Origin: Macrostomum lignano
Lineage: Eukaryota
Direction: 5' to 3'
Assembly (NCBI GenBank): GCA_002269645.1
Contig: NIVC01002284.1
Location: forward strand, 124,001-188,000
Length of the DNA stretch: 64,000 nucleotides
Below are positions 611 to 48,059 of the stretch, in pieces. Below the pieces are notes generated by a model. That model was not told the origin of the DNA. It worked only from the letters and a program-made list of their open reading frames with translations, and ran no database searches. The translations under genes and the position numbers were made by a program. Within the stretch, counting starts at the first letter, position 1. The number at the start of each line of letters is the position of its first letter.

Positions 611-884
611 AAAAACCTCGACGCAGCTGGCGTGTCAAGGTATCGACTTTGTCAGACATCAATGGCAAACAGGTTCTGTGCGTTTTATTTTTACTGACGC
701 TCGGACATTGCAAATTTTGCTTTTCTCTCCGTCTCAGGTGCTTTCTACTAGCGAAATTTAACATACACATTTGCCATCGATGTCGGCTTGTTGTCCGGAA
801 TGTACTGTGCATCTGTAGTTACTCTGTCATTTATCCAGAGACTGTAGAAGGGCGCAGTGTGGTCCATCAGCTCAGGTACAGATG

Positions 885-5718: not shown

Positions 5719-5721
5719 GTG

Positions 5722-18867: not shown

Positions 18868-21800
18868 TTAAAAATCCTTCTCGGAGAAGAAATCTGCCAA
18901 GTTGCAGACCGCCAAGTTGCAGAGTGCGGCGTCCTGCTCGGCTCTGTGCCAGCCGATGATGAGTTTGCTGCGACTGCGGGCCGCCGTGAAGCCCTCCGGC
19001 CGGCCAAGCTCTCCGCCGCTGCACTTTATCTGCAGTGGCATGTCGGACAGACACTTGATGAGCACACAGCACACGTCACAGAGACCAGGTGCGTCGCCAT
19101 TAGGGGGGGGGACAGGTGGGACGTGTCCCCCCAAGTAAAAGCTATGGGGAGGCATGCCACTGCTTTGTCCCCCACCCCCACATTGTGACTCGTTGTGGTC
19201 ATCAATATTTTTTCTTCAAGGCGCCAAAATATAGCGCCTTCGGCGCCAAGATGAGTGCCTACGGCGCTAAAATGAGTACCTGCGGCGCCAAAATGAGCGC
19301 TGACAACTCGATTCTCACAATAATGGAAATGAAGGAATTTAGTCATGTACATGTCCATGGCGACGCCCCTGACAGAGACACTGCTGAGCACACAGCTCAG
19401 GTCAAGAGGCATCACACAGACACTGCTGAGCACACAGCTCAGGTCAAGAGGCATCACACATACACTGCTGAGCACACAGCTCAGGTCAAGAGGCATCACA
19501 CAGACACTGCTGAGCACACAGCTCAGGTCAAGAGGCATCACACATACACTGCTGAGCACACAGCTCAGGTCAAGAGGCATCACACATACACTGATGAGCA
19601 CACAGCTCAGGTCAAGAGGCATCACACAGACACCACAGAACTTACCCAGAATGCTCAATCATCGATTTTATGAAATTAAACTGCGTAGAAATACGCGTAC
19701 AAACTACTAATCCGGTGAAGAAACATAAGTAGCCATAGACTATTACTCAAATGTGCGGCACAAGATATATTCAATGGTATTTCTCGCCCGCTGCGTTGGC
19801 AGGCTTAGATTGGCTACAATACTAATATATTCGCGCCTCGTCTGTTTCGCTCATTTCTGCCCTCAACAGTGGCTAGTTTGCGCGGGCTGCGCTAACTGGC
19901 GTTTGTGTACGCTGCCCACCCCTGCCCCTCCCCCGCGGCTTTCCCCCACCCCCGGTGTTGGGGGGGGGGGTTGCGTGGCGGGGGGTTTTATACCCCGCGG
20001 TTGGCTCTTTGGCCTCGCTGTCGCATTGCAATTGAAAAAAAAATTTTTATGCTGCTGAGTCATGTCACACGATTCTCTGACGGTAAGAGAACTGCGCATG
20101 GCATCCTATATACTAAAAATGAAATGTCTGTAACTAACTAGCTATGCGATAGATATCAGAAAAAATGGCTCAACCGATTTTCTTCAAACTTGCACCATTC
20201 GATCAGAAATTTTCCTGGGACGGTACATGCATCTTGGCTAAGAAATTGCTCAATGTTAAAGGGATTAAATATTCGAAAAACATGCTTTTTTGCAAAGGTC
20301 AAGCAGCTCTTTCGACCTGAAATGCATTGTAAGAATGCTAGAGAAAAAACTGACTGGCTGAATTACGATTGTGATAAAGATTGCATCACAACAAGTTGAA
20401 AACAGTGCCACAGAAACGCACACAAGACTTCATTGAAATTGCGTAACCATATTGCTAACTTGAATTTAGACTGATACTGGCTGACTGAGAAATTGATTAT
20501 GTCATAACTTTTTACTCTAACCGACTTGCTATAAGAATTTATTATAAGGGCCACAATTCAAGTTCTCCGATTGAAAAGAGATAGCCGGATGCAAACAAAC
20601 TGGAATGCTAATGTAGCGACCTTGGTTCGAATCTTAGTAGTGAAAAATGTTTTTTTATTAAAACGCCTTAAAAACACAAAATTCTAAACATTAAAGAGCC
20701 ACCATTTCAAACATTAAAGAGCCACAATGTCAAACATTAAAGAGCCACCATTTCAAACCTATAAGAGCCACCATGTCGAACATTAAAGAGCCACCATTTC
20801 AAACATTAAAGAGCCACAATGTCAAACATTAAAGAGCCACCATTTCAAACCTAAAAGAGCCACCATGTCGAACATTAAAGAGCCACCATGTCGAACATAA
20901 AAGAGCCACCATATCAAACATAAAAGAGTTACCATGTCAATCATAAAGAGCCACCATGTCGAACATTAAAGAGCCACAATGTCAAACATTTAAGAGCCAC
21001 CATTTCAAACCTAAAAGAGCCACCATGTCGAACATTAAAAAGCCACCATGTCAAACATTAAAAAGCCACCATGTCAAACATAAAACAGACACCATTAAGA
21101 ACATTAAAGAGCCACCATGTCGAACATAAAAGAGCCACCATGTAGAACATAAAAGAGTCACCATGTCAAACATTAAAGAGCCACCATGTAAAACATTAAA
21201 GAGCCACCATGTCGAACATAAAAGAGGTACCATGTCAAACATTAAAGACCCACCAGGTCAAACATGAAAGTGCCACCATGTCAAATATTAAAAAGCCACC
21301 ATGTCAAACATTAAAGAGCCACCAGGTCAAACATGAAAGTGCCACCATATAAAACATTAAAGAGCCACCAGGTCAAACATATACATGACTCCATGTCAAA
21401 CATATACGTGACTCCATGTCAAGCATTGAAGAGACACCATGTCGAACATAAAAGAGCCACCATGCAAAACATAAAAGAGCCACCATGTCTAACATTAAAG
21501 AGCCACCATGCAAAACATAAAAGAGCCACCATGTCTAACATTAAAGAGCCACCATGTCAAACATATACATGACTCCATGTCAAACGTTAAAGAGACACCA
21601 TGTCAAACATTGAAGAGCCACCATGTCAAACATTTAAGAGCCACCATGTAAAACATATACGTAACTCCATGTCAAACATTAAAGCGACACCATGTCGAAC
21701 ATAAAAGAGCCACCATGTCGAACATTAAAGAGCCACCATGTCGAACATAAAAGAGCTACCATGTCAAACATTAAAGAGCCACCATGTTAAACATAAAAGA

Positions 21801-24800: not shown

Positions 24801-27800
24801 GAAGTCAAGACTTACTGGAGGAATTACTGAGATTCGAGACTTACTGGGGAATTACTGAGACTTCAAGGCTTACTGGGGGAATTGCTGAGATTTCAAGGCT
24901 TTCTTGGATGAATTGCTGAGATGTCAAGGCTTACTGGGGAAATTGCTTAGACTTCAAGACTTACTGGAAGAATAACTGAGATTCGAGACTTACTGGGGAG
25001 TTACTGAGATTTCAAGGCTTACTGGGGGAATTGCTGAGATGTCAAGGCTTACTGAGAGGAATTGCTGAGATGTCAAGGCTTACTGGGGAAATTATTGAGA
25101 TGTTATCAAGGCTTATGGCATATTGAGCTCCTGCTGCGGACCAGAATATGCCCAGGCCAATGACGATATGCCCTAAGAGTTTGTGCTTGAAAGGATAAGT
25201 ACTATTTGCTGAATGAGAAAGGGTTTTGGGCTGATGAAGGAAACTTTGGCTGGTGAAGGTTTTGATTCATGGCAATTTATTTTTGCCAAAAATTTGAAAA
25301 AGTAAGTTTTGATTGGATTTTGAATAATAAGTAAGGTGATTACTCATTGGCCAAAATAAAAACCACTTGGCGTCATTTTTGCGCCCCCCATCGGGGGGCG
25401 AAGATTGCTAGTCCTATATACTAAAAATGAGTTGTCTGTATGTGGGTAGGTATGCGATAGATTTCGGAAAAAATGGCTCAACCGATTTTCTTCAAACTTG
25501 CACCATTCGATCAGAAATTTTCCTGGGACGGTACATGCATCTTGGCTAAGAAATTGCTCAATTTTAAAGGGATTAAATATTCGAAAAACATGCTTTTTTG
25601 CAAAGGTCAAGCAAAATTTTCGACTTGAAATGCATTGTAAGAATGCTAGAGAAAAAACTGACTGGCTGAATTTCAATTGCGATAAAGATTGCATCACAAC
25701 AAGGTGAAAACAGTGCCACAGAAACGCACACAAGACTTGATTAAAATTGCGTAACAATATTGCCAACTTAAATTAAGACTGATACTGGCTGACTGAGAAA
25801 TTGATTATGTCATAAATTTTTACTCTAACCGACTTGCTGTAAGAATTGAATTATAAGGGCCACAATTCATGTGCTCCAATTGAAAAAAGATAGCCTAGAT
25901 GCGAACAGACTGGACTGCTAATGTAGCGACCTGGGTTCGAATCTTGGTAGCGCAAAATGATTTTTTTATTAAAACACCTTAAAAACAAAAAACTGCTAAA
26001 CATAAAAGAAGCGCAATGTCAAACATACAAGAGCCACCATGTCAAACATAAAAGAGCCACCATTTCGAACAAAAAAAAGAGTTACCATTAAGAACATTAA
26101 AGAGCCACCATGTCGAACATTAAAGAGCCACCTTATCAAACATTAAAGAGCCCCCATGTCGAACATAAAAGATCTACCATGTAGAACATAAAAGAGTCAC
26201 CATGTCAAACATTAAAGAGCCACCATGTAAAACATTAAAGAGCCACCATGTCAAACATTGAAGAGCCACCATGTCAAACATAAAAGGGCCACCATGTCAA
26301 ATATTAAAGAGCCACCATGTAAAACATTAAAGAGCCACCAGGTCAAACATAAAAGGGCCACCATGTCAAACATAAAAGAGCCACCATTTCGAACAAAAAA
26401 AAGAGTTACCATTCAGAACATTAAAGAGCCACCATGTCGAACATTAAAGAGCCACCATGTCGAACATTAAAGAGCCACCTTATCAAACATTAAAGAGCCA
26501 CCATGTCGAAACATTAAAGAGCCACCATGTCAAACATAAAACAGACACCATTAAGAACATTAAAGAGCCACCATGTCGAACATTAAAAAGCCACCATGTC
26601 GAACATTAAAGAGCCACCTTATCAAACATTAAAGAGCCACCATGTCGAACATAAAAGATCTACCATGTAGAACATAAAAGAGTCACCATGTCAAACATTA
26701 AAGAGCCACCATGTAAAACATTAAAGAGCCACCATGTCAAACATTGAAGAGCCACCATGTAAAACATTAAAGAGCCACCAGGTCAAACATAAAAGGGCCA
26801 CCATGTCAAACATTAAAGAGCCACCATGTAAAACATTAAAGAGCCACTATGTCGAACATAAAAGAGGTACCATGTCAAACATTAAAGAGCCACAATGTCA
26901 AAAATTAAAGAGCCACCATGTCGAAGATTAAAGTGCTACCATGTCAAACATAGAAGAGCCACCATTTCAAACCTTAAAGAGCCACCATGTCGAACATTAA
27001 AGAGCCACCATGTCGAACATTAAAGAGCCACCATGTCAAACATTAAAGAGCCACCATGTCAAACATTAAAGAGCCACCATGTCGAACATAAAAGATCTAC
27101 CATGTAGAACATTAAAGAGCCACCATGTCGAACATAAAAGATCTACCATGTAGAACATAAAAGAGTCACCATGTCGAACATTAAAAAGCCACCACGTCGA
27201 ACATTAAAGAGCCACCATGTCGAACATAAAAGATCTACCATGTAGAACATAAAAGAGCCACCATGTCGAACATTAAAAAGCCACCATGTCGAACATTAAA
27301 GAGCCACCATGTCGAACATAAAAGATCTACCATGTAGAACATAAAAGAGTCACCATGTCAAACATTAAAGAGCCACCATGTCGAACATTAAAGAGCCACC
27401 ATGTCAAACATTAAAGAGCCACCATGTCAAACATTAAAGAGCCAGCATGTCAAACACTAATGAGCCAGCATGTCAAACATAAAAGAGCCACCATGTCGAA
27501 CATTATTGAGCAACCATGTCAGACATTAAAGAGCCACCATGCCAAACATAAAAGAGCCAACATGTCAGACATTAAAGAGCCACCATATCAAACATTAAAG
27601 AGCCACAATGTCAAACATAAAAGAGCCACCAAATCAAACATAAAAGAGCCACCATGTCAAACATAGAAGAGCCACCATGTCAAACATTAAAGAGCCACAA
27701 TGTCAAACACAAAAGAGCCACCATTTCAAACCTTAAAGAGCCACCATGTCGAACATTAAAGAGCCACCATGTCGAACATAAAAGAGCCACCATATCAAAC

Positions 27801-30800
27801 ATAAAAGAACTACCATGTCAAACATTAAAGAGCCACCATGTCGAACATTAAAGAGTCACCATGTCAAACATAAAACAGACACCAATAAAAACATTAAAGA
27901 GCCACCATGTCGAACATTAAAGAGCCATCATGTCAAACATAAAACAGCCACTATGTTGAACATTAAAGAGCCACCATGTCAAACATAAAACAGAGCCACC
28001 ATTTCGAAAAGTAAAGAGCCACCATGTCGAACATTAAAGAGCCACCATTTCAAACATAAAAAATCTACCATGAAGAACATAAAAGAGTCACCATGTCAAA
28101 CATTAAAGAGCCACCATGTAAAACATTAAAGAGCCACTATGTCGAACATAAAAGAGGTACCATGTCAAACATTGAAGAGCCACCATGTCGAACATAAAAG
28201 GGCCACCATGTCAAATATTAAAGAGCCACCATGTCAAACATTAAAGAGCCACCATGTCAAACATAAAAGAGCCACCATGTCAAACATTAAAGAGCCACCA
28301 TGTCAAACATTAAAGAGCCAGCATGTCAAACATAAAAGAGCCACCATGTCGAACATTATTGAGCCACCATGTCAGACATTAAAGAGCCACCATGCCAAAC
28401 ATAAAAGAGCCACCATATCAAACATAAAAGAACTACCATGTCAAACATAAAAGAGCCACCATGTCAACCATCAAAGAACCACCATATCAAACATTAAAGA
28501 GCCACCATGTCAAAAATTAAAGAGCCACCATGTCGAAGATTAAAGTGCTACCATGTCAAACATAGAAGAGCCACCATGTCAAACATTAAAGAGCCACAAT
28601 GTCAAACACAAAAGAGCCACCATTTCAAACCTTAAAGAGCCACCATGTCGAACATTAAAGAGCCACCATGTCGAAGATTAAAGTGCTACCATGTCAAACA
28701 TAGAAGAGCCACCATGTCAAACATTAAAGAGCCACAATGTCAAACACAAAATAGCCACCATTTCAAACCTTAAAGAGCCACCATGTCGAACATTAAAGAG
28801 CCACCATGTCGAACATAAAAGAGCCACCATATCAAACATAAAAGAACTACCATGTCAAACATTAAAGAGCCACCATGTCGAACATTAAAGAGCCACCATG
28901 TCAAACATAAAACAGACACCAATAAAAACATTAAAGAGCCACCATGTCGAAACATTAAAGAGCCACCATGTCAAACATAAAACAGACACTATTAAGAACA
29001 TTAAAGAGCCACCATGTCGAACATTAAAAAGCCACCATGTCGAACATTAAAGAGCCACCTTATCAAACATTAAAGAGCCACCATGTCGAACATAAAAGAT
29101 CTACCATGTAGAACATAAATGAGTCACCATGTCAAACATGAAAGAGCCACCATGTAAAACATTAAAGAGCCACCATGTCAAACATTGAAGAGCCACCATG
29201 TAAAACATTAAAGAGCCACCAGGTCAAACATAAAAGGGCCACCATGTCAAACATTAAATAGCCACCATGTAAAATATTAAAGAGCCACTATGTCGAACAT
29301 AAAAGAGGTACCATGTCAAACATTAAAGAGCCACAATGTCAAAAATTAAAGAGCCACCATGTCGAAGATTAAAGTGCTACCATGTCAAACATAGAAGAGC
29401 CACCATTTCAAACCTTAAAGAGCCACCATGTCGAACATTAAAGAGCCACCATGTCGAACATTAAAGAGTCACCATGTCAAACATTAAAGAGCCACCATGT
29501 CAAACATTAAAGAGCCACCATGTCGAACATAAAAGATCTACCATGTAGAACATAAAAGAGTCACCATGTCGAACATTAAAAAGCCACCATGTCGAACATT
29601 AAAGAGCCACCATGTCGAACATAAAAGATCTACCATGTAGAACATAAAAGAGTCACCATGTCAAACATTAAAGAGCCACCATGTCGAACATTAAAGAGCC
29701 ACCATGTCAAACATTAAAGAGCCACCATGTCAAACATTAAAGAGCCAGCATGTCAAACACTAATGAGCCAGCATGTCAAACATAAAAGAGCCACCATGTC
29801 GAACATTATTGAGCCACCATGTCAGACATTAAAGAGCCACCATATCAAACATTAAAGAGCCACAATGTCAAACATAAAAGAGCCACCAAATCAAACATAA
29901 AAGAGCCACCATGTCAAACATAGAAGAGCCACCATGTCAAACATTAAAGAGCCACAATGTCAAACACAAAAGAGCCACCATTTCAAACCTTAAAGAGCCA
30001 CCATGTCGAACATTAAAGAGCCACCATGTCGAACATAAAAGAGCCACCATATCAAACATAAAAGAACTACCATGTCAAACATTAAAGAGCCACCATGTCG
30101 AACATTAAAGAGCCACCATGTCAAACATAAAACAGACACCAATAAAAACATTAAAGAGCCACCATGTCGAACATTAAAGAGCCATCATGTCAAACATAAA
30201 ACAGCCACTATGTCGAACATTAAAGAGCCACCATGTCAAACATAAAACAGAGCCACCATTTCGAAAAGTAAAGAGCCACCATGTCGAACATTAAAGAGCC
30301 ACCATTTCAAACATAAAAAATCTACCATGAAGAACATAAAAGAGTCACCATGTCAAAAATTAAAGAGCCACCATGTAAAACATTAAAGAGCCACTATGTC
30401 GAACATAAAAGAGGTACCATGTCAAACATTGAAGAGCCACCATGTCGAACGTAAAAGGGCCACCATGTCAAATATTAAAGAGCCACCATGTCAAACATTA
30501 AAGAGCCACCATGTCAAACATAAAAGAGCCACCATGTCAAACATAAAACAGACACCATTAAGAACATTAAAGAGCCACCATGTCGAACATTAAAAAGCCA
30601 CTATGTCGAACATTAAAGAGCCACCATTTCAAACATAAAAGATCTACCATGAAGAACATAAAAGAGTCACCATGTCAAACATTAAAGAGCCACCATGTAA
30701 AACATTAAAGAGCCACTATGTCGAACATAAAAGAGGTACCATGTCAAACATTGAAGAGCCACCATGTCGAACATAAAAGCCACCATGTCAAATATTAAAG

Positions 30801-36800: not shown

Positions 36801-39800
36801 AAGAGCCACTATGTCAAACATTTAGGAGCCACTTTGTCGAACATTAAAGAGCCAACATGTCAGACATTAAAAAAGCCACCGTATCAAATAAAAAGAGTTA
36901 ACATGTAGAACAAAAAAGAGCCACCATTTCGAACATAAAAGAGCCAACATGTCAAACATAAAGAGCCACCATGTCAAACATTTAAGAGCCACCATGTCAA
37001 ACATATATGTGACTTTATGTCAAACATTAAAGAGCCACCATTTCGGACATAACAGAGCTACCATGTAAAACATTAAAGAGCCACCATGTCAAACATTAAA
37101 GAGCCACCATGTCGAACATAAAAGAGCCACCATGTCAAACCTAAAAGAGCCACCATGTCGAAAATAAAAGAGCCACTATTTCGAACATTAAAGAGCCACC
37201 ATTTCGAACATTAAAGAGCCACCATGTCGACCATAAAAGAGCCACCATGTCAAACATGAAAGAGCTATAACATGAAGAATATTAAAGAGCCACCATGTCG
37301 AACATTAAAGAGCCACCATGTCGAACATTAAAGAGCCACCATGTCGAACATTAAAGAGCCACCATGTCGAACATTTAAGAGCCACCATGTTAAACCTAAA
37401 AGAGCCACCATGTTAAACCTAAAAGAGCCACCATGTTAAACCTAAAAGAGCCACCATGTTAAACCTAAAAGAGCCACCATGTTAAACCTAAAAGAGCCAC
37501 CATGTCAAACCTAAAAGAGCCACCATTTCGAACATATAAGTGACTTTATGTCAAACATTAAAGAGCCACCATGTCAAACATTAAAGAGCCACCATGTAAA
37601 ACAAAAGAGCCACCATTTCGAACATTAAAGAGCCACCATGTCAAACATTTAAGAGCCACCATGTTAAACATAAAAGAGCCACTATGTTGAACATTAAACA
37701 GCCATCATGTCAAACCTAAAAGATCCACAATTTCGAACACTTAAGAGCCACAATGTAGAATATTAAAGAGCTACCATGTCAAACATTTAAGAGCCACCAT
37801 GTCAAACATTTAAGAGCCACCACGTAAAACATTAAAGAGCCACTATTTGAAACATTAAAGAGTCACCATGTCAAACATTTAAGAGCCACCATGTCAAACA
37901 TTTAAGAGCCACTATGTCAAACCTAAAAGAGCCACCATGTCAAACCTAAAAGAGCCACCATGTCGAACATAAAAGAACCACCATGTCAAACCTAAAAGAG
38001 CCACCATGTCGAACATAAAAGAGCTATACCATGAAAAACATTAAAGAGCCACTTTCTCGAACATTAAGGAGCCACCATGTCAAACATTTAAAAGCCACCT
38101 TGTCAAACATTAAATAGCCACTTTGTCGAACATTAAAGAGTCACTGTGTCAAACATAAAAGAGCCACTGTTTCAAACATAAAAGAGCCACCAGGTTAAAC
38201 ATTAAAGAGCCACCATGTCAAACAATAAAGAGGCACCATGTCAAACATAAAAGAGCCACCATGTCTGACATTAAAAAGCCATCGTTTCAAACATAAAACA
38301 GTTGCCATGTAGAACTTAAAACAGCCACCATGTCAAACATAAAATTTACACAATTTCAAACATAAAAGTAAGCGAATTTTAAAGGAGCCACTATAATGCT
38401 AAGGAAATTATCGCACTAGCTACTTATTGTCTGGTGGATGCTTGCTATTTGGGGATGCTATCTATGTAGGGGATGCTTGCTATCTGGCGGATGCTTGCTA
38501 TCTGGGGGATGCTTGCTATCTGGGGGTTGCTTGTAATCTGGAAGATGCCTGCTATCTGGCGGATGCTTGCTATCTGGGGGATGCTTGCTATCTGGGGGAT
38601 GCTTGCTATCTGGGGGATGCTTGCTATCTGGGGGATGCTTGCTATCTGGGGGTTGCTTGTAATCTGGAAGATGCTTGCTATCTGGCGGATGCTTGCTATC
38701 TGGAAGATGCTTGCTATCTGGCGGATGCTTGCTATCTGGGGGATGCTTGCTATCTGGGGGATGCTTGCTATCTGGGGGATGCTTGCTATCTGGGGGTTGC
38801 TTGTAATCTGGAAGATGCTTGCTATCTGGGGGATGCTTGCTGTCTTGGGATGATTTCTTTTTGCTTCCTTTGAGTATTTTGTCTGTTTTTTTTTTGTGAA
38901 GGCCTTTTTTGGCTATCTTTTTGTTACTTGTAGAGAACAGAGGTTCTATACAGATGTCCCCCAACGGGGGGCGAAGATTGCTAGTTGCGTGCTAAAGGCT
39001 TGCAAACCGTAGGCAACAAGCGCACCCTATTGGAGAGACTTCTGCAGTCTCAAGGCTCAGTGGACACGGGACCCATCGATGAATCGGACACCAGCAATCC
39101 ATCGAGAAGGCGAGGGCCCGACGACGGGACGGCGGCGGTCGGCGGCGGCGAGGCGGCAGGAGGGACCCACGGGACTGGCGACCTGGACCGGGACCTGCGG
39201 GAGGCAGAGAAGCAGCTGCGCTTGCTGACAATTCGTCGGGACCAAGCGCGCCTGGAAGCCGAGATCCGTCAGCTGGACCGCCGTGCCGATGAGCCGCAGC
39301 GGCGACCTGCAAATGCCTCAGTGCCCGGTGAGTACTCAAGCCTTGAGGATTTAGTGCTGAGACCTACTGTCAGAGTGCCGGATGAGGTGCAGCAGGCGGG
39401 GCAGCAGCACCCGAATGCGTACCGGGTGCCGGAGTTCATCAGCGCTCGCAAGCGGCTGGCGCTGAACAAGTCAAGTCAAGCCAGCAAGCAGGCCGCCCTG
39501 GACAGCCTCTCGGTTGGCGACTGGATCACCGGAAACGCCAACGCGCTGATGCAGATGCTGAAGGACGGCAGACTCCTCGTCCTCCGTGATGGCGCTATCG
39601 ACATGTCGGAGCTGCTGGAGTACCTGAAGCACACGGCAAAAATTGGCGACCTCCTCGATCTCGGATTCGACCGCGGCCGCGTTTTGCGCTATGATGATGA
39701 GTACAGAGCGCAGCAGGCTGAGGCCGGCGCCTGGGACAGCTCGGTGACCGACCTGGGTCTGGTGGCGGCACACCTGATGGCTCCGAATCTTCAACTGCAG

Positions 39801-42800
39801 GCCGGCTCAGCGGGCAGGTCATCAGCAAAGCGACCGGTCTGCTTCGACTTCAACAAGGTGTCCGGCTGCCAGCGCAACCCGTGTCGTTTCGCACACAGTT
39901 GTAGGCGCTGCGGCCAGGCGCACTCGGAGGCCTCCTTCCACAGAGCGGAGGGCGGCCAGGCGGCAAAAAACTGATGGACGGGGTTCAGCGGCAGGGGTCT
40001 CTTAACATCGAGTCGCCCGCCCCTGCCGCTGCTTCTGTCGAACCCCAAAAGGAGGGCGACTCAAGCGGGACCCTCTCCACCGACTTGCGCCTTGAAGCCT
40101 GGCGCCTCGAGCTGGCCGACACGGAGATGCCAACGAAGCTCGCGCAGTTCGTTTTGAGCGGTGTGAAGGACGGTTTCCGCATCAGGAACGTCAGTAGTCC
40201 GGTGGACTCTGTCGAGCAGGAGAACTACGGCTCCATCGGTCAGCATCGAGTCGAGGTTCAGGCCCAAGTCCGCCGGGAACTGCAAGCTGGAAGATATCGC
40301 GTTAGCGCCAAGCCGACTATTGTGAGCGCGCTGGGCGCCATTCCGAAGTCCGGGGGCGGCATCCGGCTCATCCATGACTGCAGCCAGCCCCAGGGTCGGG
40401 CCGTCAATGATTTGTTTGCTTGCCAGCAGAAGCTTCGGTTTTCTTCGGCGGCTGCCTTTGCCAGGAAGCTGCGCCAGGACATGTACATGTGTAAAGTCGA
40501 CCTGAGCCAGGCCTACCGGTCTTGCGGCATTCACCCGGACGACCACTGCCTCACCGGTCTGAAGTTCACGTTCGAGGGCGAGGCGGAGCCGACCTACATG
40601 GTGGACACCCGGCTGCCGTTCGGAGCGGCAGCATCCGTGAGCAGCTTTTTCCAGATCAGCAACGCCATTCGGTTTATGATGCTCAAGCGCAGGTTCTTCA
40701 ACTTCGAGGTCTACATGGACGACTTCGGCTTCGCGGGTTCGCTGACTGAGTGCTGGCGCTTTTACAACAAGCTGACGCAGCTGCTGCAGAGCCTGGGCCT
40801 GACTGTCAACTGGAAGAAGTGCGTGCAGCCGACGCAGGAGATGTGCTTCCTGGGCATTCAGTTCAACACGCAGTCGGGGCTGATGAGTCTGCCAGAGACG
40901 AAGGTCGAGGAGCTGCAGGCCTGCCTTGACCTCTGCTGCACAAAGCGGCGGATCTCCAAGCACGAGTTGCAGAAGCTGGTGGGCAGGCTCAACTGGGCCT
41001 GTCAGGTGGTCTGCAACGGCCGGCCGTTTCTGCGAGACCTGATCGACCGCGTCAACGACTTGTCGAGCCCGAAGGATCGGCTGTTGGTGGATGGCCAGTT
41101 CAAGAGCGTCCTGAGCTGGTGGAAAGTTGCTCTGCGGCAGCAGCCAGGTCGCGAGCTCTGGCCTGCTGCCAGGAGGCCGGTTGCCATGGAGACGGACGCC
41201 TGTCTGGTGGGGGCAGCGGCTGTTCTGAGAGATCCGGCTGGTTCTGACTGGTGCTATCTGCAGTGGGAAGTCGACGCTGACAGCGAGTTCAGCGATTGCT
41301 GCATCAACTACAAGGAGGCTGCCGCGGTGCTGCTGGCGTTGCTGCACTGGCGCCGTCAACTGCACAACTGCTGGATCGCTGTCTACTGCGACAATGCTGC
41401 AGCCTGCGCGATTATCAACAAGGGGTCATCCAGGGAGCCCCGGCTGTTGCGGCTGCTGCAGACTGTTGCTCTGCTGTGCCTAAAGCAGAACATTGTGGTC
41501 ACCGCCCACCATGTGCCCGGCCGGTTTCAGCTGTTTGCCGACGCCGCCTCCCGCCTGCATTGCCGGCAGGAGTTGCTGAATTTTCTGTTGCGAGCCTATG
41601 CAACCGCCTCTGTTTGCCCGCATGAATTTGCGGGACATGCGCTTAGCCCTGCCTCCGCCGCCTTTCTTTTTTTACAGGTCGCCTCCCTGGGTCTCTCGAC
41701 GCTGCCGCCGACAAACTGCTCCAGCAGGCCTACGCATCATCGTCCAAGAGGTCGCTGTCATCTGCTGTCCGCTCCTGGCAACGCTTCTGCCGAGAGCGGC
41801 GGCTCGACCCACTCGGCTGTCGGGCGGAGGATCTCGCAAACTACGTCGGCCAGCTCGTGGACGGCCGGCTCAGCTCCTTCGGCAGCGTCCGCGTGCATAT
41901 CAGCGCTCTGTCCGCCAGTTTCCGACTGGCGGGAGTGCCGGACCTGACCAGGCACCCGCTGCTGCACCTGGTTCTGCGGGGAGCCAAGCGCGAGCTGGGG
42001 TCGGAGCCGAGTCGCAAGCTGCCGGTGTCGCCAGACCTTTTGTCGAGACTGCGGCTGCAAGTCGACAGCTCGAATCCTGTGCAGGCGGCCTGCTGGGCTG
42101 CGGTCATGTGCGCTTGGTGGGGGATGTTCAGGAAGTCCAGCCTGCTGCCGCGAGGGCGCGCCGATCCGCCAGTGCTGCGACTGAGTTCGCTGGCAAGATG
42201 CCCCGAAGGCCTGCTTCTGACGTCCAGCTTCGGGAAGACCAACCAGTACGGTCGGACGCATCGCGTGCTGCTGCCAGAGTTGACTTCGGGCCACCCGCTC
42301 TGTCCAGTGGCGGCACTGCGAGGCCACCTGCGCTGCAACCGGCTGAAGCAGCGGCAGCAGGGCCTGTTTTCATTCAGCAGTGGATCGTCCGGTCACGCAT
42401 CTCTGACGTCCCGGAGGCTCGATGTACAGTTCAGGTCGTGGCTCGGCAAGGCGGGAGTGCCGGCGGCCGGGTTTTCTGTGCATAGCCTGCGGCGAGGCGC
42501 CGCCACCTGGGCGGCCCGGTGCGGCCTGTCAGTGCGGGAGATCCAGTGCGTGGGTGACTGGCGCAGCGACGCAGTGAGCGTCTACCTGTCCCGCGATGAC
42601 ACGGCTCTGCGTGCGGCGCGCAAGCTTGCTGTTGCGGCGCTTGACCAAACCTGACGTGTTTCGCGGTTTTTTTGGAAGAAAGGTTTTGGGCTCCTTTTTT
42701 GTTTGCTTGTCCGCTTTTGCTTGCCTCTGCTTGGTCTGCTTTTGCTCTAGTCTGTTTTCTTGCTGCTTTTGGTGTTGGGGGGAGTGCATGGCAGCCTTCC

Positions 42801-45800
42801 CTGTCCTCCTCGCTGTTCCTGCGCCATTTGCTGCTCTTGAGCTTGCTGCGTTCGTCTTCTGGGGTGGGCAGTGGGCACTAATGGCTAGTTTGCGCGGGCT
42901 GCGCTAACTGGCGTTTGTGTACGCTGCCCACCCCTGCCCCTCCCCCGCGGCTTTCCCCCACCCCCGGTGTTTGGGGGGGGGGTTGCGTGGCGGGGGGTTT
43001 TATACCCCGCGGTTGGCTCTTTGGCCTCGCTGTCGCATTGCAATTGAAAAAAAAAATTTTTTTTCGTATCCTGTCACTCTTTTAATCCTGCTTTGATCCG
43101 TTCTAACTGTTGTCAATAATGCTTTAATATTTTCTCGTAATCGGTCTGAAATATACGGGGGGGAGTGCATGGCAGCCTTCCCTGTCCTCCTCGCTGTTCC
43201 TGCGCCATTTGCTGCTCTTGAGCTTGCTGCGTTCGTCTTCTGGGGTGGGCAGTGGGCACTAACCTAACTATATTAATATATTGGTCACTAGTCGACTAAG
43301 CTTACCGGGCACGGTTTGAAGGAAAGCTGTGAAACCTCGTTTCTGGTGGACAACGATAGGAAAAATTTGGACAGCCATAGGCAGCACACTGTTTTCGCGA
43401 TTTTGCGGAAGGCATACTTCACTGCAGCAAAACCAAAAACACCCAAATTCTTTGTGAAAAGACAATGCTGCTGCAAGTCATTCCATTCTATGGTCTAATT
43501 CCATTTGAAGTAAGCTATTGGCTTCATTTCTCGCCCGCTTTTTCTTGAATTGTCTATGGCCTAAGCACTCGAGACCTGTCATATTAAGTCATGTTGAAGT
43601 CATGTTAGAAAAAAATCCATCGTGTTTTTATTCCTTTACTGTTTGTCGAATATGCTGCGTTATTCTTCAATACGCGAAGACGAAATTAGTGGATTGAGCT
43701 CAGATGAGCTCGATTTCATCACGCATCTCGATCCTCGGGACCATGTCGACAGAATCGGTCAATGGACAGGGCTGACGGATGAGCAAGAGAGGCTAATTGA
43801 TGAGGAACTACGCAATCGTACGCCGGAAGATCACGTTGGAAACCTGTTTCGTGAATTGACCGAAGAAGAAGAAGCTGGCCTACATCATGTGGAGCAAGAA
43901 AGTAAACGGAAGTCGACGGTTAAGCAAACTGAATTGCATATTCGCAAACTAAAAGATCCTATCTACGCCTGTTCTTCGTTCAGTTAAAAACAGCTGATGG
44001 AAGCCATATGCTGTAAGTACACTGCCGTATTTTCGCGCATCTGTGCACTGGTATTTATTAGAGAAGCGAAATCTGAAGCTGATTGGCAACGATGCGTTCT
44101 TATCGTTTGATCGAACGTACAAGGCTATGTTGGTCAAATCGCTTCAGCAAAAAAGGCTGTAGGCAGCGGTCCAAAGTACTGTCCAATTGACGACGAAGAC
44201 TTCAACCGCCTACGCCTCTATTTCGATCGTTCGACGCCAACTCGACTGCAATTTGAAGTTCTGTTCAAGATTGTTTATGGCTTTGGTTTTCGCGGCAGGG
44301 AGTGGCTGCGAGAGTTGACTAAGGCCGATATGATAATTTACGATCGTGACGGTGTTCGCTATGTGGACCTGCTGAAGACATCTATCGAAAAAACCGTGTC
44401 TGATAGTAATCCGTCGACATCTAAGAGCATTATCTTAGCCGAGACACCGGATTATCCAGGCTCATGTCCTGTACGGGCGATTGAGTTGTATCTGTCGGTC
44501 ATTCCAGAAGATGTTGCCTGTCTCTGGCCCAAGCCTTTGAATCAAGCCGACAATGACGGTATATGGTACCACAAGACCCTGGTGCTTGGCAAGAATTGGT
44601 TGAACGAGTTTATGAAAAAAACTGTGCGATCAGGCTGGTCTGAGTTGCCGTTCCCACACAAATCATTGCATTCGAGCGTCGGTAGTGTCAAATCTTATCG
44701 AAGATGAAGTCACTAGATCAGACATTCAAGTCGTAACCGGCCACAAAAGAATCGAGAGTGTGGACCTCTACAACAAGAGAATGAAGTTCTCGAAGAAGGT
44801 TGATCTATCAAACACTATTAGTCGTCGACTGGCTGTTCCAGGCCGGTCTGAAACAAGCTTTACCGCATCGAACAGGTCGGTTGTATCGACTGGAGACGTA
44901 ATCGAGAGATCGGCTACCGACTGCTCGACTAGCTCTGTTGTGTCTACTAAGAACTCATTCACGAGATCTGCTACCAACTACTCTATTGCAGTCGGTAGTT
45001 CCCAGAGTGCAAGCTCACTGTTTGGAAATTGCAAGTTTGAAAATTGTACGTTTAACTTTAATCAATCAAACTAAGGTCAGGAGGTATACCGCGTGAGAAA
45101 TCTAAAAACTGTCAATGGACTATATCTCTAATTTTTATCTCATGTTAATGTTAATATCTCATGTTAATGCTAATATACCTTTTTGCAATCTAGTTTGCCA
45201 AAACCGCAATCAATTTTGCCCACTAAGAGAATTTACTTGTATATTTCTAATATCTTGGCTTAACCTGCCCATTCATTGCCATAGTTTGAACCATAGACAA
45301 ATCCTTGAAACTGCATTCAATTTTGCCAAAACTGCGATCAAGTTTGCCCATAGTAAAAAGCAAGCACCGCAGACAAACATAGAAGCGCAAGAATGGCTCA
45401 GTGCGGATCTTATAACAAGATTTCTACGAAGGACCGGCAGCGCTTAATTCAAGCATTTCAGAACGGAGAGGACTGGCAAGATTTCGGTAGACTTTTGGGC
45501 ATCGCACGAAGAACCGTGACCTATATCGTTGGGCGATTTATTGCAAGTGGTCGCATTGATCCTCTTCCTCGCGGAGGTGCCAAACGGAAGTCACTCAGCG
45601 ATGCTATGGTGGAGAGAATATGTAGCTATGTCCAAAGTAATCATCGAATTAATTGTGCATGCAGTGTGTCAGCTCATTCCCTGTTAGTTTTAGTTATTCG
45701 TTCTCAAATAAATTCGTTTCGGGCAAACTTGATCGCAGTTTTGGCAAAATTGAATGCAGTTTCAAGGATTTGTCTATGGTTCAAACTATGGCACTGAATG

Positions 45801-48059
45801 GGCAGGCTGAGCCAAGATATTAGAAATATACAAGTAAATTCTCTCCGTGGGCAAAATTGATTGCAGTTTTGGCAAACTAGATTGCAAAAAGGTATATTAG
45901 CTCAAAATATACACAGTTTCTTTGTGCCCACTTGGGGCCATAGACAACTTTTGCTGGCGGGCAGACATCGCTTTCACCCTCGTTTCGGCAGGCTTAGGAC
46001 TGCTACAATGTAACGATATATACCGATTTTTTAGCGGCTTCAGCTTACGCAATTGCTGCCGAAAAAAATCGGTATATGTCATTATTGTACCCTTTTGACT
46101 TCCCTTGTCTATGGCCCAGACATAGTGCGGATGCTGAGTATGAAATGCGATTGTTGCCGGAATGCGCTTTGAAAGGGTTGTAGAGATAATCAATCGTCTA
46201 TGGCAAATTTAGTTGCTCTCTAAATGAAAGGGTTGTAGAGATAATTAATCGTTTATGGCAAATTTAAAGGACAGTGAAGACAGCTAGCCTGGCTGCCATG
46301 AGTTAATTCTCAAGTTGATTTTGAGCTTGAATTAATTCTCCTATTCGGAGTGCAAATAGGAAAAGTAGCTATGATTCGCTACGCAAACATTCCTGGCGGA
46401 GAAATATGTGGACTCTCCACGGACGAGTTGGCTTTTGTCACCCGAGAGTCGAGCACGCGCTACGTTCTGGAGATGGACAACCTGGATGCGTCGTCCAGTT
46501 CCAACGGGCTGCCTGAGCTAGGTAGCGAAGATCTGGAAATTGACGACGATGCGGAATCCACCATCGAAAGTGTGACAACTGGGTCTGATAGAGGCGAGCT
46601 GATGAAAGCACCCGAGGGCGGCCAAGACCTGCCGAGAAGCCTCTGTGGTGGTCAGTTCCACAACTGCACATTCAACTTTTACGGAAAGTAAAACAATTGA
46701 TTCGATCGGTTTGTTCTTAAGAACTTTTTGTGACTATGAAACACTTTCGCCGTGTTGCTATTGTTGTTCCTTGTTTTGATAGCCAAATACATTCGTCTGA
46801 AATCCGGCAACAATCGAAAAAAGCCGACAAACAATTAAATTGTTACCGCAAGTATGAATGCCGGAAACCATAGACAAAAGGGAACAATATTATTTGCATG
46901 AAAACTTGTGTGCGATTTGTGTTGTATTTTTCTGAGTTGCTTGAGTCAAATGGAAATGGAATCGAAGATGAGAAGCTTTCTTATGTTGCAGGCTGGTTGC
47001 TACGCAGACATCTGACTTCTTGTTTGGATGCTCCATGCGGCGAATGCACGTCAGAATTGCAGACTGCTGATAATACCTGCAGACTCTTCATCAATTTGAA
47101 GAGCATAATAATTCAGGTGGTTATGTGCTACACATTTGAGTTAATAGTCTATGGCTACTTATGTTTCTTCACCGGATTAGTAGTTTGTACGTATATCTAT
47201 TTCTACGCAGTTAATTTCATAAAAATCGCAGATTGAGCATTCTGGGTAAGTTCTGTGCAGACACTGATGAGCACAAAGCTCAGGTCAGAGACATCACACA
47301 GACACTGATGAGCACAAAGCTCAGGTCAGAGACATCACACAGACACTGATGAGCACAAAGCTCAGGTCAGAGACATCACACAGACACTGATGAGCACAAA
47401 GCTCAGGTCAGAGGCATCACACAGACACTGATGAGCACACAGCTCAAGTCAAAGACATCACACAGACACTGATGAGCACACAGCTCAGGTCAAGAGACAT
47501 CACACAGACACTGATGAGCACACAGCTCATGTCAGAGACATCACACAGACACTGATGAGCACACAGCTCAAGTCAAAGACATCACACAGACACTGATGAG
47601 CACAGTTTAGGCTAAGGCCACCGGCCACACAGCCCCAGCCAGAGCCGTCCCACTCACCCCAGTGTGCCCGTCAGCCAGGTCAACTCGCCAATCCCGGCCG
47701 CAGAGGGTGATCGGCTTTCGCCTAAATCCGCGGCGCCGAATGCCGCTGAGCAGCTCTTCGAGCTCCCACTTGGCCGGCTCCGGTTCAACGCCCAGGGACG
47801 CCAGCAGTCGCAGGTCCGAAAGCTCTACGATGACGCCGGCGCTGCAGAGTCCGGTACCGACCAGGATGACGGCCAGGTAGTCGGGCCAGTCCCAAAGACC
47901 CACCGGGGCCCGGGACCGCTCGGCCAGGGTGGCCACATCGCAGCGCCAGTACGGCAGCTGACGGCGCCGCTCCTCCGCCACTGCGGCCGCCGTGGCGCCG
48001 CCTGCGGCTGCGGCTTCCGCCACGCGAATCCGATTTAGCAGAAACTGGTCCACGTTCAT
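18868..48059 (-). CDS. Profilin-like protein, 187 aa; exon 1 48059-47658, exon 2 19029-18868, intron 28,628 bp
   Basis: Exon 1 WPDYLAVILVGTGLCSAGVI...ITLCGRDWRVDLADG is the profilin N-half; exon 2 GFTAARSRSKLIIGW...CNLAVCNLADFF is the C-half; GTGAGT donor and CAG acceptor both phase 0; same minisatellite at both intron ends. Confidence 0.75.
19086..19371. mobile_element. hAT-type MITE, 286 bp
   Basis: 15-bp TIR CAGGTGCGTCGCCAT / ATGGCGACGCCCCTG (14/15 match); 8-bp TSD ACAGAGAC. Confidence 0.85.
19372..19633. repeat. 42-bp minisatellite (left half of an interrupted array)
   Basis: Unit GACACTGCTGAGCACACAGCTCAGGTCAAGAGGCATCACACA. Confidence 0.9.
20690..22310. repeat. 23-bp Helitron-internal satellite (unit 1)
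   Basis: (CCACCATGTCAAACATTAAAGAG)n. Confidence 0.95.
22378..23130. repeat. 18-bp Helitron-internal minisatellite (also 34305-34940 and 38430-38850)
   Basis: (GGGGGATGCTTGCTATCT)n. Confidence 0.95.
23846..25110. repeat. 21-bp minisatellite inside Helitron unit 2
   Basis: (GAGATTTCAAGGCTTACTGGGGGAATT-like)n, 7-aa periodicity in the ORF track. Confidence 0.9.
26000..34245. repeat. 23-bp satellite, 8.2 kb, with kb-scale higher-order repeats (unit 3)
   Basis: Identical ORFs recur at 4135-4136 bp spacing (27654/31790, 28139/32274, 28691/32826). Confidence 0.95.
35640..38345. repeat. 23-bp satellite (unit 4), more diverged monomers
   Basis: Direct reading. Confidence 0.9.
39974..41947 (+). CDS. 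pol: Reverse transcriptase / RNase H of the Ngaro element
   Basis: IRLIHDCS, KVDLSQAY, RLPFG, YMDDF, FLGI; RH motifs METDAC, YKEAAAV, YCDN, ADAASR; uninterrupted 657 aa. Confidence 0.93.
   Translation: MDGVQRQGSLNIESPAPAAASVEPQKEGDSSGTLSTDLRLEAWRLELADTEMPTKLAQFVLSGVKDGFRIRNVSSPVDSVEQENYGSIGQHRVEVQAQVRRELQAGRYRVSAKPTIVSALGAIPKSGGGIRLIHDCSQPQGRAVNDLFACQQKLRFSSAAAFARKLRQDMYMCKVDLSQAYRSCGIHPDDHCLTGLKFTFEGEAEPTYMVDTRLPFGAAASVSSFFQISNAIRFMMLKRRFFNFEVYMDDFGFAGSLTECWRFYNKLTQLLQSLGLTVNWKKCVQPTQEMCFLGIQFNTQSGLMSLPETKVEELQACLDLCCTKRRISKHELQKLVGRLNWACQVVCNGRPFLRDLIDRVNDLSSPKDRLLVDGQFKSVLSWWKVALRQQPGRELWPAARRPVAMETDACLVGAAAVLRDPAGSDWCYLQWEVDADSEFSDCCINYKEAAAVLLALLHWRRQLHNCWIAVYCDNAAACAIINKGSSREPRLLRLLQTVALLCLKQNIVVTAHHVPGRFQLFADAASRLHCRQELLNFLLRAYATASVCPHEFAGHALSPASAAFLFLQVASLGLSTLPPTNCSSRPTHHRPRGRCHLLSAPGNASAESGGSTHSAVGRRISQTTSASSWTAGSAPSAASACISALCPPVSDWRECRT
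41678..42654 (+). CDS. Tyrosine recombinase of the Ngaro element
   Basis: Frame open from 41647; AYASSSKR..., GMFRKSSL, KTNQ, HSLRRGAATW, GDWRSDAVSVYL (R-K-HxxR-W-Y). Confidence 0.9.
43306..43415 (-). CDS. THAP domain first exon
   Basis: MPSAKSRKQCAAYGCPNFSYRCPPETRFHSFPSNRA followed by a GTAAGC donor; not in the ORF track. Confidence 0.7.
43652..45074 (+). pseudogene. Crypton-type tyrosine recombinase (DUF3504/ZMYM-related), several frameshifts; candidate element 43550-46116
   Basis: LFFVQLKTADG, FGFRGREWLREL, CPVRAIELYL, LGKNWL, HTNHCIRAS, VTGHKRIESVDLY; FENCTFNF tail. Confidence 0.8.
45169..45901 (+). mobile_element. Internally deleted Tc1/IS630-like element
   Basis: About 180-bp TIRs (TA-CCTTTTTGCAATCTAGTTTGCC...); internal ORF 45393+ with a paired-type HTH (LLGIARRTV..IVGRF...PLPRGG); no DDE domain. 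Confidence 0.8.
46350..46691 (+). other. Acidic ORF ending GGQFHNCTFNFYGK, a Crypton-like C-terminal tail fragment
   Basis: Same NCTFNF tail motif as the Crypton at 45040-45074. Confidence 0.4.
46930..47130 (+). pseudogene. C-terminal remnant of a P-like transposase
   Basis: LSYVAGWLLRR...CGECTSEL...FINLKS resembles the P/THAP9 C-terminal L-Y-I-A-G-Y..CxxC pattern; abuts the right TIR. Confidence 0.55.
47258..47605. repeat. 41-bp minisatellite (right half of the interrupted array)
   Basis: Continues in register from 19633 after the TSD. Confidence 0.9.

What the first reader, a model, noticed from the sequence alone, without database searches (positions are those of the whole stretch)
19634..47257. 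27.6-kb P-like transposon with intact ends carrying several other TE classes
Seen: about 125-bp TIRs and an exact 7-bp TSD (CAGACAC); removing the element restores the 41/42-bp minisatellite in register. Inside are a THAP exon, a Ngaro retroelement, Helitrons, a Crypton, a Tc1 remnant and a P-transposase tail. Established: CA..TG ends with 7-8 bp TSDs fit the P superfamily. Inference: either a about 4-kb non-autonomous element that later accumulated inserts, or a vehicle that moved cargo as a block. Nothing in the ORF track reveals it.
Basis: partly seen in the sequence, partly recalled or inferred. Interest (0 to 1): 0.78.

Follow-up and report, generated by a model that had tools for sequence, protein, structure and literature searches.

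The report
Small transposon swollen by nested insertions
A roughly 4.2-kb defective cut-and-paste transposon sits in a minisatellite and measures 27.6 kb only because a retrotransposon landed in it and a satellite-filled chain of Helitrons then landed in that retrotransposon, which is an ordinary pile-up in a repeat-rich animal genome.

Summary
The structural observation holds. There are inverted ends of about 128 bp (19634-19762 / 47124-47257, about 90% identical) and an exact 7-bp duplication, CAGACAC. Removing the element plus one duplicate restores a single in-register 41/42-bp minisatellite.

The 27.6 kb has three layers:
- A 4,231-bp non-autonomous element with inverted ends (19634-19869 plus 43263-47257).
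- A 4.5-kb Ngaro-type tyrosine-recombinase retrotransposon (19870-43262) with near-identical split direct repeats, inserted 42 bp past a THAP first exon.
- An 18.9-kb head-to-tail chain of four non-autonomous Helitrons (20104-38984) inserted at an A|T inside the retrotransposon's first ORF. Removing the chain restores that ORF.

The Crypton-like recombinase pseudogene and the Tc1-like remnant are real.

The "P-transposase tail" has no detectable homologue. The THAP exon lies on the minus strand, opposite to that tail. "P-like" therefore rests only on the 7-bp duplication and a 37-codon THAP motif, and is tentative.

Sequential nesting is favoured over block transport of cargo, but one copy cannot settle it. 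No other copies or empty alleles could be reached. This is an ordinary finding.

The parts
19372..19633 (.). Left half of the target minisatellite (42-bp units, 6.2 copies)
   Evidence: TRF. Continuous with the right half once the element and 7 bp are removed.
19627..19633 (.). Left copy of the 7-bp target-site duplication CAGACAC
19634..19762 (+). Left terminal inverted repeat of the outer element (starts CACAGAAC)
   Evidence: K2P distance to the right arm is 0.099, with 2 indels.
19763..19869 (.). Left subterminal DNA of the outer element, up to the retrotransposon insertion point
   Evidence: Lies between the end of the inverted repeat and repeat A1. No coding signal in six frames.
19870..43262 (+). 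Ngaro-type tyrosine-recombinase retrotransposon (4,512 bp of its own DNA) interrupted by the Helitron chain
   Evidence: Split direct repeats A1 19870-20048 = A2 42882-43060 (98.9%) and B1 42777-42881 = B2 43158-43262 (100%). RVT_1 + RT_RNaseH in ORF 39974-41947 and Phage_integrase in 41857-42654. No methyltransferase hit.
20062..20103 (+). First 14 codons of retrotransposon ORF1 (MSHDSLTVRELRMA), cut off by the Helitron chain
   Evidence: Joining 20103 to 38985 gives one open frame with a SAP-like motif spanning the junction.
20104..38984 (+). Head-to-tail chain of four non-autonomous Helitron-like units: U1 20104-23256, U1b 23257-25411, U2 25412-35062, U3 35063-38984
   Evidence: 5' TCCTATATACTAAAAATG. 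3' hairpin CCCCC(A/T)NCGGGGGG followed by GATTGCTAG. Unit junctions read CTAG|TC. Outer flanks are A| and |T with no duplication. Heads are 90-92% identical.
25998..34186 (.). Largest 23-bp satellite array (356 copies). Sister arrays at 20686-22236 and 35643-38344, 18-bp arrays at 22373-23121, 34298-34925 and 38430-38849, and a 30-bp array at 23841-25103
   Evidence: TRF. Together about 15.5 kb, 56% of the 27,624 bp.
38985..39974 (+). Remainder of retrotransposon ORF1 (gag-like, Cys/His-rich C-terminal end)
43305..43415 (-). THAP-type first exon MPSAKSRKQCAAYGCPNFSYRCPPETRFHSFPSNRAR, followed by a GTAAGC splice-donor-like site. It reads towards the left end.
   Evidence: The signature C-x4-C...FHxFP occurs once in the six-frame window against 0.01 per shuffle. 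The Pfam THAP model does not score it because it is too short.
43598..45071 (+). Crypton-like tyrosine-recombinase pseudogene (DUF3504 + recombinase catalytic end), with at least one definite frameshift near 44617 and a probable second near 44120-44159
   Evidence: Pfam DUF3504 E=9e-6 and Phage_integrase E=2e-5. Homologue P0141 is 59% and 44% identical in two frames.
45169..45901 (+). Tc1/mariner-like remnant: 181-bp inverted repeats around a paired-type helix-turn-helix remnant
   Evidence: Inverted repeat 97% identical. HTH_28, HTH_23 and PAX hits, and a weak HTH_SB hit.
46302..46688 (+). Short ORF related to both the N-terminal and C-terminal ends of the Crypton-like protein (possible internally deleted relative)
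   Evidence: BLASTP E=3e-7 (N-terminal end) and E=1e-3 (C-terminal ...CTFNF).
46874..47123 (+).
   Evidence: No Pfam hit at E<=10, no meaningful PDB hit, and 0 hits among 1.84 billion representatives.
47124..47257 (-). Right terminal inverted repeat of the outer element
47258..47264 (.). Right copy of the 7-bp target-site duplication CAGACAC
47258..47604 (.). Right half of the target minisatellite (41-bp units, 8.4 copies)
   Evidence: TRF.

Best explanation
A non-autonomous cut-and-paste DNA transposon of about 4.2 kb inserted into a 41/42-bp minisatellite and duplicated 7 bp. It has 128-bp inverted ends and is most likely of the P superfamily. Of its transposase gene it keeps only the THAP first exon (minus strand). 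It also holds a decayed Crypton-like recombinase gene and a Tc1-like remnant.

Later, a young Ngaro-type tyrosine-recombinase retrotransposon integrated 42 bp downstream of that exon, in what would be the first intron. Later still, a pre-formed chain of four non-autonomous Helitrons, whose interiors are 23-, 18- and 30-bp satellite arrays, inserted by rolling-circle transposition at an A|T in codon 15 of the retrotransposon's first ORF.

Shown: the ends, the duplication, the three layers and their junctions. Inferred: the order 'outer element first', the P assignment, and the one-step arrival of the Helitron chain.
For: Outer element:
- Inverted ends, exact 7-bp duplication and restored minisatellite register.

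Retrotransposon:
- A1/A2 are 98.9% and B1/B2 100% identical, in the order A1...B1-A2...B2, with the internal repeats downstream of the recombinase domain. This is the Ngaro layout described in PMC4157794.
- RT, RNase H and recombinase domains are present and no methyltransferase hit was found.

Helitron chain:
- TC...CTAG termini, a subterminal hairpin, an A|T target and no duplication, as defined for canonical Helitrons (PMC12001565).
- Removing the chain restores ORF1 across a SAP-like motif, so it arrived after the retrotransposon copy was made.
- The sizes add up exactly: 4,231 + 4,512 + 18,881 = 27,624.
- Helitron heads differ by 8-10% (K2P) while the retrotransposon repeats differ by 2 of 284 positions. 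The units were therefore already diverged when they arrived.

Order and family:
- The outer element's own content looks older than the inserts. Its arms are 10% diverged with indels, and its recombinase gene is frameshifted.
- The THAP signature is unique in the window.
- 7-bp duplications are typical of Galileo and 1360 in the P superfamily.
Against: - No transposase catalytic domain is present, so the superfamily is not proven. The Pfam THAP model does not score the 37-residue exon.
- The THAP exon reads towards the nearer (left) end. That fits only if the element's 5' end is the right end and about 3.7 kb of other material lies upstream of the start codon.
- Inverted-repeat arms need not be identical at insertion, so their 10% divergence is not a clock. 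The retrotransposon repeats could be kept identical by gene conversion. The order of events is therefore inferred, not shown.
- No second copy and no empty allele could be examined.
Confidence: 0.72

Rival explanations
1. Vehicle reading: the inverted-end element transposed into this minisatellite already carrying the retrotransposon and the Helitron chain, as one 27.6-kb block.
For: Both ends are complete and the duplication is exact, so the ends are still a plausible transposase substrate. Nothing in a single copy dates the outer insertion relative to the inner ones.
Against: The two inner layers look very young: retrotransposon repeats differ at 2 of 284 positions and all its ORFs are open apart from the Helitron break. 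The outer element's own sequence looks decayed: a frameshifted recombinase gene and arms 10% diverged. All the bulk enters at one point as a nest, which is what sequential insertion produces. From general knowledge, cut-and-paste efficiency falls with element length. No second copy was found in the window or in the metagenome scans.
Confidence: 0.1
2. The outer element is a cut-and-paste transposon of another superfamily (for example Mutator-like, Dada or hAT), and the THAP exon is a captured or unrelated fragment.
For: Long inverted ends of 100-200 bp are common in Mutator-like elements (general knowledge). The claimed P tail has no homologue. The THAP exon is only 37 codons, unscored by Pfam, and points towards the nearer end.
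Against: From general knowledge of the published classifications, 7-bp duplications are characteristic of P-superfamily members, while Mutator-like elements usually make 8-10 bp and hAT 8 bp. THAP is the DNA-binding domain of P-superfamily transposases, and its signature occurs once in the window, inside this element. Dada targets small-RNA genes, and none is present here.
Confidence: 0.2
3. The element is moved by the Crypton-type tyrosine recombinase it encodes. The inverted ends would be recombinase-binding arms and the 7-bp repeat the crossover core shared by the donor circle and the target.
For: The only recombinase-type gene in the outer element's own DNA is a tyrosine recombinase, with a second related short ORF. 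Joining the ends as a circle would give inverted arms around an asymmetric 7-bp spacer, the general layout of tyrosine-recombinase sites (inference).
Against: Cryptons are described without inverted ends (general knowledge). The target flanks show no similarity to the element's arms beyond the 7 bp (sequence). Another Crypton-like gene lies outside the element without such ends, so Cryptons simply seem to be common here. The THAP exon points to a DDE-type transposase.
Confidence: 0.04
4. Assembly artefact: the two ends belong to different copies or haplotypes, joined through collapsed or misjoined satellite arrays.
For: The interior contains an 8.2-kb array of 23-bp units and similar arrays, which are hard to assemble. 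Array lengths may be wrong.
Against: The exact duplication and the restored minisatellite register tie the two ends to one insertion event. The retrotransposon's halves on either side of the Helitron chain restore one ORF, and its terminal repeats match. The layered order is therefore internally consistent.
Confidence: 0.04

Closest known systems
P-superfamily DNA transposons, especially Galileo and 1360 (Drosophila)
   Same: 7-bp target-site duplication, long inverted ends, a THAP N-terminal exon, frequent internal deletions, and nested transposons and tandem repeats inside copies (PMC4168063).
   Different: No catalytic transposase sequence survives here. The inverted ends have no known relative. 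The host is a flatworm-like genome. The THAP exon lies 3.8 kb from the end it reads away from. Membership is therefore tentative.
Ngaro retrotransposons (tyrosine-recombinase retroelements, non-DIRS)
   Same: RT + RNase H + tyrosine recombinase, no methyltransferase hit, and split direct repeats A1...B1-A2...B2 with the internal repeats downstream of the recombinase.
   Different: 97 bp of unique DNA lie between A2 and B2. ORF1 starts with a SAP-like motif. The best database relative of the RT is only 66% identical. This copy is broken by an 18.9-kb Helitron chain.
Non-autonomous canonical Helitrons with central tandem repeats and head-to-tail arrays (for example the oyster and Xenopus families)
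   Same: 5' TC, 3' CTAG, a subterminal hairpin, an A|T target without duplication, central satellite arrays, and tandem arrangement attributed to rolling-circle replication (PMC8268682 and PMC12001565).
   Different: The arrays are unusually long (up to 356 copies, 8.2 kb). The units in the chain are 8-10% diverged and one (U1b) has a different interior, with an inverted copy of the 3' end. U1 has lost its 3' terminus.
Crypton DNA transposons
   Same: A tyrosine-recombinase gene with a DUF3504-type region and no reverse transcriptase next to it.
   Different: It is a frameshifted pseudogene. Its boundaries cannot be defined, so whether it is a nested insertion or part of the outer element's original content is open.

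Membership tests
P superfamily (class II, TIR order) | Target-site duplication of 7-8 bp | tested here: met
   Exact 7-bp CAGACAC on both sides. Register test. Family range taken from PMC4168063.
P superfamily (class II, TIR order) | Terminal inverted repeats | tested here: met
   About 128 bp at 90% identity, E=4e-46. This feature is generic to TIR transposons and not specific to P.
P superfamily (class II, TIR order) | THAP DNA-binding domain (C2CH plus invariant P, W, F, P) at the transposase N-terminus | tested here: inconclusive
   Only exon 1 is present, carrying C, C and the first P in the right order and spacing. The motif is unique in the window. The W...CxxHF half is absent. Pfam THAP gives no hit.
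P superfamily (class II, TIR order) | RNase-H-like catalytic domain with GTP-binding insertion, and the C-terminal region of P/THAP9 transposases | tested here: not met
   Six-frame Pfam scans of the element's own DNA found none. The claimed tail has no PDB match and no match in 1.84 billion representatives. This is expected for a non-autonomous copy, so it does not exclude the family.
P superfamily (class II, TIR order) | Shared ends with an autonomous P-like element in the same genome | not testable with these tools
   The source genome is not in the searchable collections. No match in the window or in metagenome contigs.
Ngaro (tyrosine-recombinase retrotransposon) | RT, RNase H and tyrosine recombinase, with no integrase and no methyltransferase | tested here: met
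   RVT_1 E=1e-13, RT_RNaseH E=8e-5, Phage_integrase E=1.6e-4, no other domains.
Ngaro (tyrosine-recombinase retrotransposon) | [quoted passage not shown] | tested here: met
   A1 19870-20048 = A2 42882-43060, and B1 42777-42881 = B2 43158-43262. Definition from PMC4157794.
Helitron (canonical, non-autonomous) | 5' TC and 3' CTRR termini with a hairpin about 10-15 nt before the 3' end | tested here: met
   TCCTATATAC... and ...CCCCCATCGGGGGGCGAAGATTGCTAG at three 3' ends. The hairpin folds in all three, with z=-3.9 for U1b but only -1.1 to -1.3 for U2 and U3.
Helitron (canonical, non-autonomous) | Insertion between A and T without target duplication | tested here: met
   ...CATGGCA | chain | TTGCGTG... 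Removing the chain restores the retrotransposon's ORF1 exactly.
Helitron (canonical, non-autonomous) | Rep/helicase protein | tested here: not met
   No long ORFs outside the repeat arrays in 20104-38984, and the head ORFs have no Pfam hit. The units are non-autonomous.
Crypton | Tyrosine-recombinase gene without reverse transcriptase | tested here: met
   DUF3504 and the Phage_integrase catalytic end, both just under Pfam's gathering scores. The homologue P0141 carries PF00589.
Tc1/mariner | TA duplication, inverted ends and a DDE/D transposase with a paired-type helix-turn-helix | tested here: inconclusive
   181-bp inverted ends and a helix-turn-helix remnant are present. No catalytic domain. 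The TA duplication cannot be separated from the palindromic ends.

The most novel reading that the evidence does not exclude
The inverted-end element is not a DDE transposon at all. It would be a Crypton-type tyrosine-recombinase element that uses its 128-bp inverted ends as recombinase arms, with the 7-bp repeat as a crossover core. That would be a class of eukaryotic recombinase transposon with inverted ends and flanking repeats that has not been described. A less radical variant is that the element recently moved as a 27.6-kb block carrying a retrotransposon and 16 kb of satellite DNA.
Probability: 0.04. Interest if true: 0.75.

Novelty: new member of a known kind. Interest (0 to 1): 0.25.

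Why it matters
As it stands this is a clean worked example of three-layer transposon nesting. It corrects the impression of a giant cargo-carrying transposon.

Two aspects have modest wider value. First, the Helitron chain shows roughly 19 kb, mostly satellite DNA, delivered to a new site with exact Helitron boundaries. That bears on how rolling-circle elements seed satellite arrays. Second, the outer element may be a handle for finding a P-like family in a macrostomid-type flatworm genome. Neither would surprise a transposon specialist.

Tried and rejected
- The claimed P tail (46874-47233) was scanned against Pfam at E<=10, alone and within six-frame read-throughs with X at each stop. It was also searched with phmmer against PDB and against 1.84 billion representatives. 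Nothing was found, so it is dropped as evidence.
- A search for the second half of the THAP domain (W...CxxHF) in all frames found none in the element.
- Searches for other copies of the ends found none in the window or in JGI metagenome contigs with two different end patterns. The other DNA collections hold prokaryotes, viruses, plasmids or E. coli and were not scanned.
- The RT's best relative is 66% identical and the host-type gene's best relative is 58% identical, in Macrostomum lignano. The source species is therefore not in the protein collection, and look-ups by exact protein sequence were not attempted.
- Rfam and tRNA scans of the window were empty, which removes the idea of a small-RNA gene target of the Dada type.
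- The generic direct-repeat finder was swamped by the 23-bp satellite. It was replaced by a self-BLAST with the arrays masked.
- In-situ triplication of a retrotransposon leader was considered as the origin of the three similar head-plus-satellite units. It was rejected because the units have Helitron termini, relatives occur elsewhere in the window (189-613 and 62624-62774), and they are ten times more diverged than the retrotransposon's own repeats.
Full report
**1. The observation**

The two ends are real. 19634-19762 pairs with 47257-47124 as an inverted repeat of about 128 bp (135 alignment columns, 90.4% identity, E=4e-46 within the window). A 38-nt core is identical in both arms and occurs nowhere else in the 64 kb, with none expected by chance.

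CAGACAC lies immediately outside both ends, at 19627-19633 and 47258-47264.

The flanks are two halves of one minisatellite: 42-bp units on the left and 41-bp units on the right. Joining them after removing exactly 7 bp gives a single 14.5-copy array with TRF score 994. Removing 0 or 14 bp gives 945 and 931, and removing 20 bp splits the array.

One caveat applies. In a tandem array the duplication length is fixed only modulo the period. A 48-bp duplication would not be exact, so 7 bp is the simple reading.

**2. Anatomy of the 27,624 bp**

A self-comparison with the tandem arrays masked resolves three layers whose sizes add up exactly.

| Layer | Coordinates | Own DNA |
|---|---|---|
| Outer element | 19634-19869 plus 43263-47257 | 4,231 bp |
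| Retrotransposon | 19870-43262 | 4,512 bp |
| Helitron chain | 20104-38984 | 18,881 bp |

*Layer 1, the outer element.*

*Layer 2, the retrotransposon.*
- It has split direct repeats: A1 19870-20048 = A2 42882-43060 (98.9%), and B1 42777-42881 = B2 43158-43262 (100%).
- It has an uninterrupted 657-codon RT/RNase H ORF and a tyrosine-recombinase catalytic region, with no methyltransferase hit.
- This is the Ngaro layout, with the internal repeats downstream of the recombinase (PMC4157794).

*Layer 3, the Helitron chain.*
- Four units lie head to tail. Each starts TCCTATATACTAAA (U1b starts TCTTATATACTAAA).
- Three of the four end with a G+C hairpin followed by GATTGCTAG. Unit junctions read CTAG|TC. 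The chain is flanked by A on the left and T on the right, without duplication.
- These are the defining features of canonical Helitrons.
- Joining 20103 to 38985 restores one open reading frame, MSHDSLTVRELRMA|LRAKGLQTVGNKRTLLERL..., with a SAP-like motif spanning the junction. The chain therefore inserted into codon 15 of the retrotransposon's first ORF.

**3. What fills the Helitrons**

U1, U2 and U3 share one plan: a head of about 580 bp, a 23-bp satellite (67, 356 and 117 copies), a spacer of about 90 bp, an 18-bp satellite and a short tail. U1b instead carries a 30-bp satellite between 168-bp inverted repeats, one arm of which is an inverted copy of the Helitron 3' end.

Tandem repeats total about 15.5 kb, or 56% of the 'element'.

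Diverged relatives of the head and of the 23-bp repeat occur outside the element, at 189-613 and 62624-62774. This is therefore a dispersed family. Helitrons with central satellites and tandem arrangements are documented in oyster and Xenopus.

**4. The outer element's own 4.2 kb**

On the minus strand, 43415..43305 reads MPSAKSRKQCAAYGCPNFSYRCPPETRFHSFPSNRAR and is followed by GTAAGC. This is the start of a THAP domain: the two cysteines and the first invariant proline, in the spacing described.
- The signature occurs once in the six-frame translation of the window, against 0.01 per shuffle.
- The Pfam model does not score so short a piece.
- The second half of the domain is absent.
- The retrotransposon sits 42 bp beyond the exon's end.

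On the plus strand the element holds three further features:
- A Crypton-like tyrosine-recombinase gene at 43598-45071. Pfam gives DUF3504 at E=9e-6 and Phage_integrase at E=2e-5. A JGI homologue, P0141, aligns in two frames with a shift near 44617.
- A Tc1-like remnant at 45169-45901, with 181-bp inverted repeats around a paired-type helix-turn-helix.
- A short ORF at 46302-46688, related to both ends of the Crypton-like protein.

**5. The 'P-transposase tail'**

The open frame at 46874-47233 runs into the inverted repeat, and its unique part ends near 47123. It has no Pfam hit even at E<=10, no meaningful PDB hit, and no hit at E<=0.001 among 1.84 billion representative proteins.

It also lies on the strand opposite to the THAP exon. 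I therefore do not count it as evidence.

**6. Which superfamily**

- *For P:* a 7-bp duplication (Galileo typically makes 7 bp and P makes 8 bp), long inverted ends as in Galileo, and a THAP first exon inside the element.
- *Missing:* any catalytic domain, and any autonomous relative.
- *Awkward:* the exon reads towards the nearer end. If it belongs to the element, the right end is the 5' end, and about 3.7 kb (Crypton-like gene, Tc1 remnant and other DNA) lies upstream of the start codon.

I rate P membership at roughly one half to two thirds.

**7. Order of events: accumulation or vehicle**

- *Shown:* the Helitron chain arrived after this retrotransposon copy was made, because it breaks an otherwise open ORF1.
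- *Inferred:* the retrotransposon is young. Its repeats differ at 2 of 284 positions and its ORFs are open. The outer element's own content looks older, with arms at K2P 0.099 with indels and a frameshifted recombinase gene.
- *Limits:* inverted arms need not start identical, and gene conversion could keep the retrotransposon's repeats alike. The order 'outer first' is therefore likely, not proven.

The Helitron heads differ by 8-10%, about ten times more than the retrotransposon's repeats. The units were therefore already diverged on arrival. The simplest account is one rolling-circle event that ran from U1's 5' end to U3's 3' end, bypassing the internal terminators. Repeated insertion at the A|T formed by the host A and the resident 5' T is the alternative.

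**8. Source**

An ankyrin plus Mab-21-type gene at 7377-11595 matches only Macrostomum lignano proteins, at 45-58% identity. The RT's best relative is 66% identical. The window probably comes from a macrostomid-type flatworm that is not itself in the protein collection. This is why no other copies or alleles could be retrieved.

**9. Verdict**

The interpretation as one large transposon carrying many transposon classes overstates it. This is a 4.2-kb defective element with one nested insertion point, and more than half of the interior is satellite DNA.

The family label is tentative. Block transport and a recombinase-driven mechanism remain possible at low probability. The finding is a new member of known kinds and of modest interest.

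No step had to be referred. The retroelement was examined piece by piece and never assembled.

Noticed in passing
window 7377-11595 (+): Long open frames encoding many ankyrin repeats, followed by a Mab-21-type (cGAS-like nucleotidyltransferase family) C-terminal domain. All database relatives are Macrostomum lignano proteins at 45-58% identity, which suggests a macrostomid-type flatworm source and an expanded gene family.
   Followed up: partly
window 14800-15095: A third block (7.4 copies) of the same 41-bp minisatellite that the element split. It lies 4.3 kb upstream and is closer to the right-hand variant (95-98%) than to the left-hand one (88-92%). Its flanks share nothing else with the insertion site.
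   Followed up: partly
window 50580-51724 (+): Another Crypton-like region outside the element: an ORF with a weak QRICH1-domain hit, plus 25% identity to the recombinase homologue P0141. It has no inverted ends like those of the outer element.
   Followed up: partly
window 189-613 and 62624-62774: Diverged relatives (71-77%) of the Helitron head. The first is followed by a 21/44-bp array related to the 23-bp satellite. The second starts at a TCCTATATAC 5' end preceded by T rather than A.
   Followed up: partly
window 23673-25412: Helitron unit U1b contains 168-bp inverted repeats (92%) around a 30-bp satellite. The left arm is an inverted copy of the Helitron 3' hairpin and CTAG end, a foldback-like arrangement whose origin is unexplained.
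   Followed up: no
window 43598-43984, 44616-45071 and 46302-46688: The Crypton-like protein, its short relative and the JGI homologue P0141 all end in a conserved C-x-F-x-x-C-T-F motif. The two window copies also share an N-terminal GLS(S/T)DEL-x-F motif. The function of these motifs is unknown.
   Followed up: partly
window 884-1691, 4797-5722, 12733-13555, 15776-16697, 55919-56669: Unrelated minisatellite arrays (58-, 39/30-, 32-, 16- and 34-bp units, 0.7-0.9 kb each) are scattered through the window. The region is unusually rich in tandem repeats even outside the element.
   Followed up: no
window 46170-46266: A 42-bp direct repeat (95%) spaced 55 bp apart, in the outer element's right part between the Tc1 remnant and the short ORF. 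It could be a subterminal repeat or a chance match.
   Followed up: no
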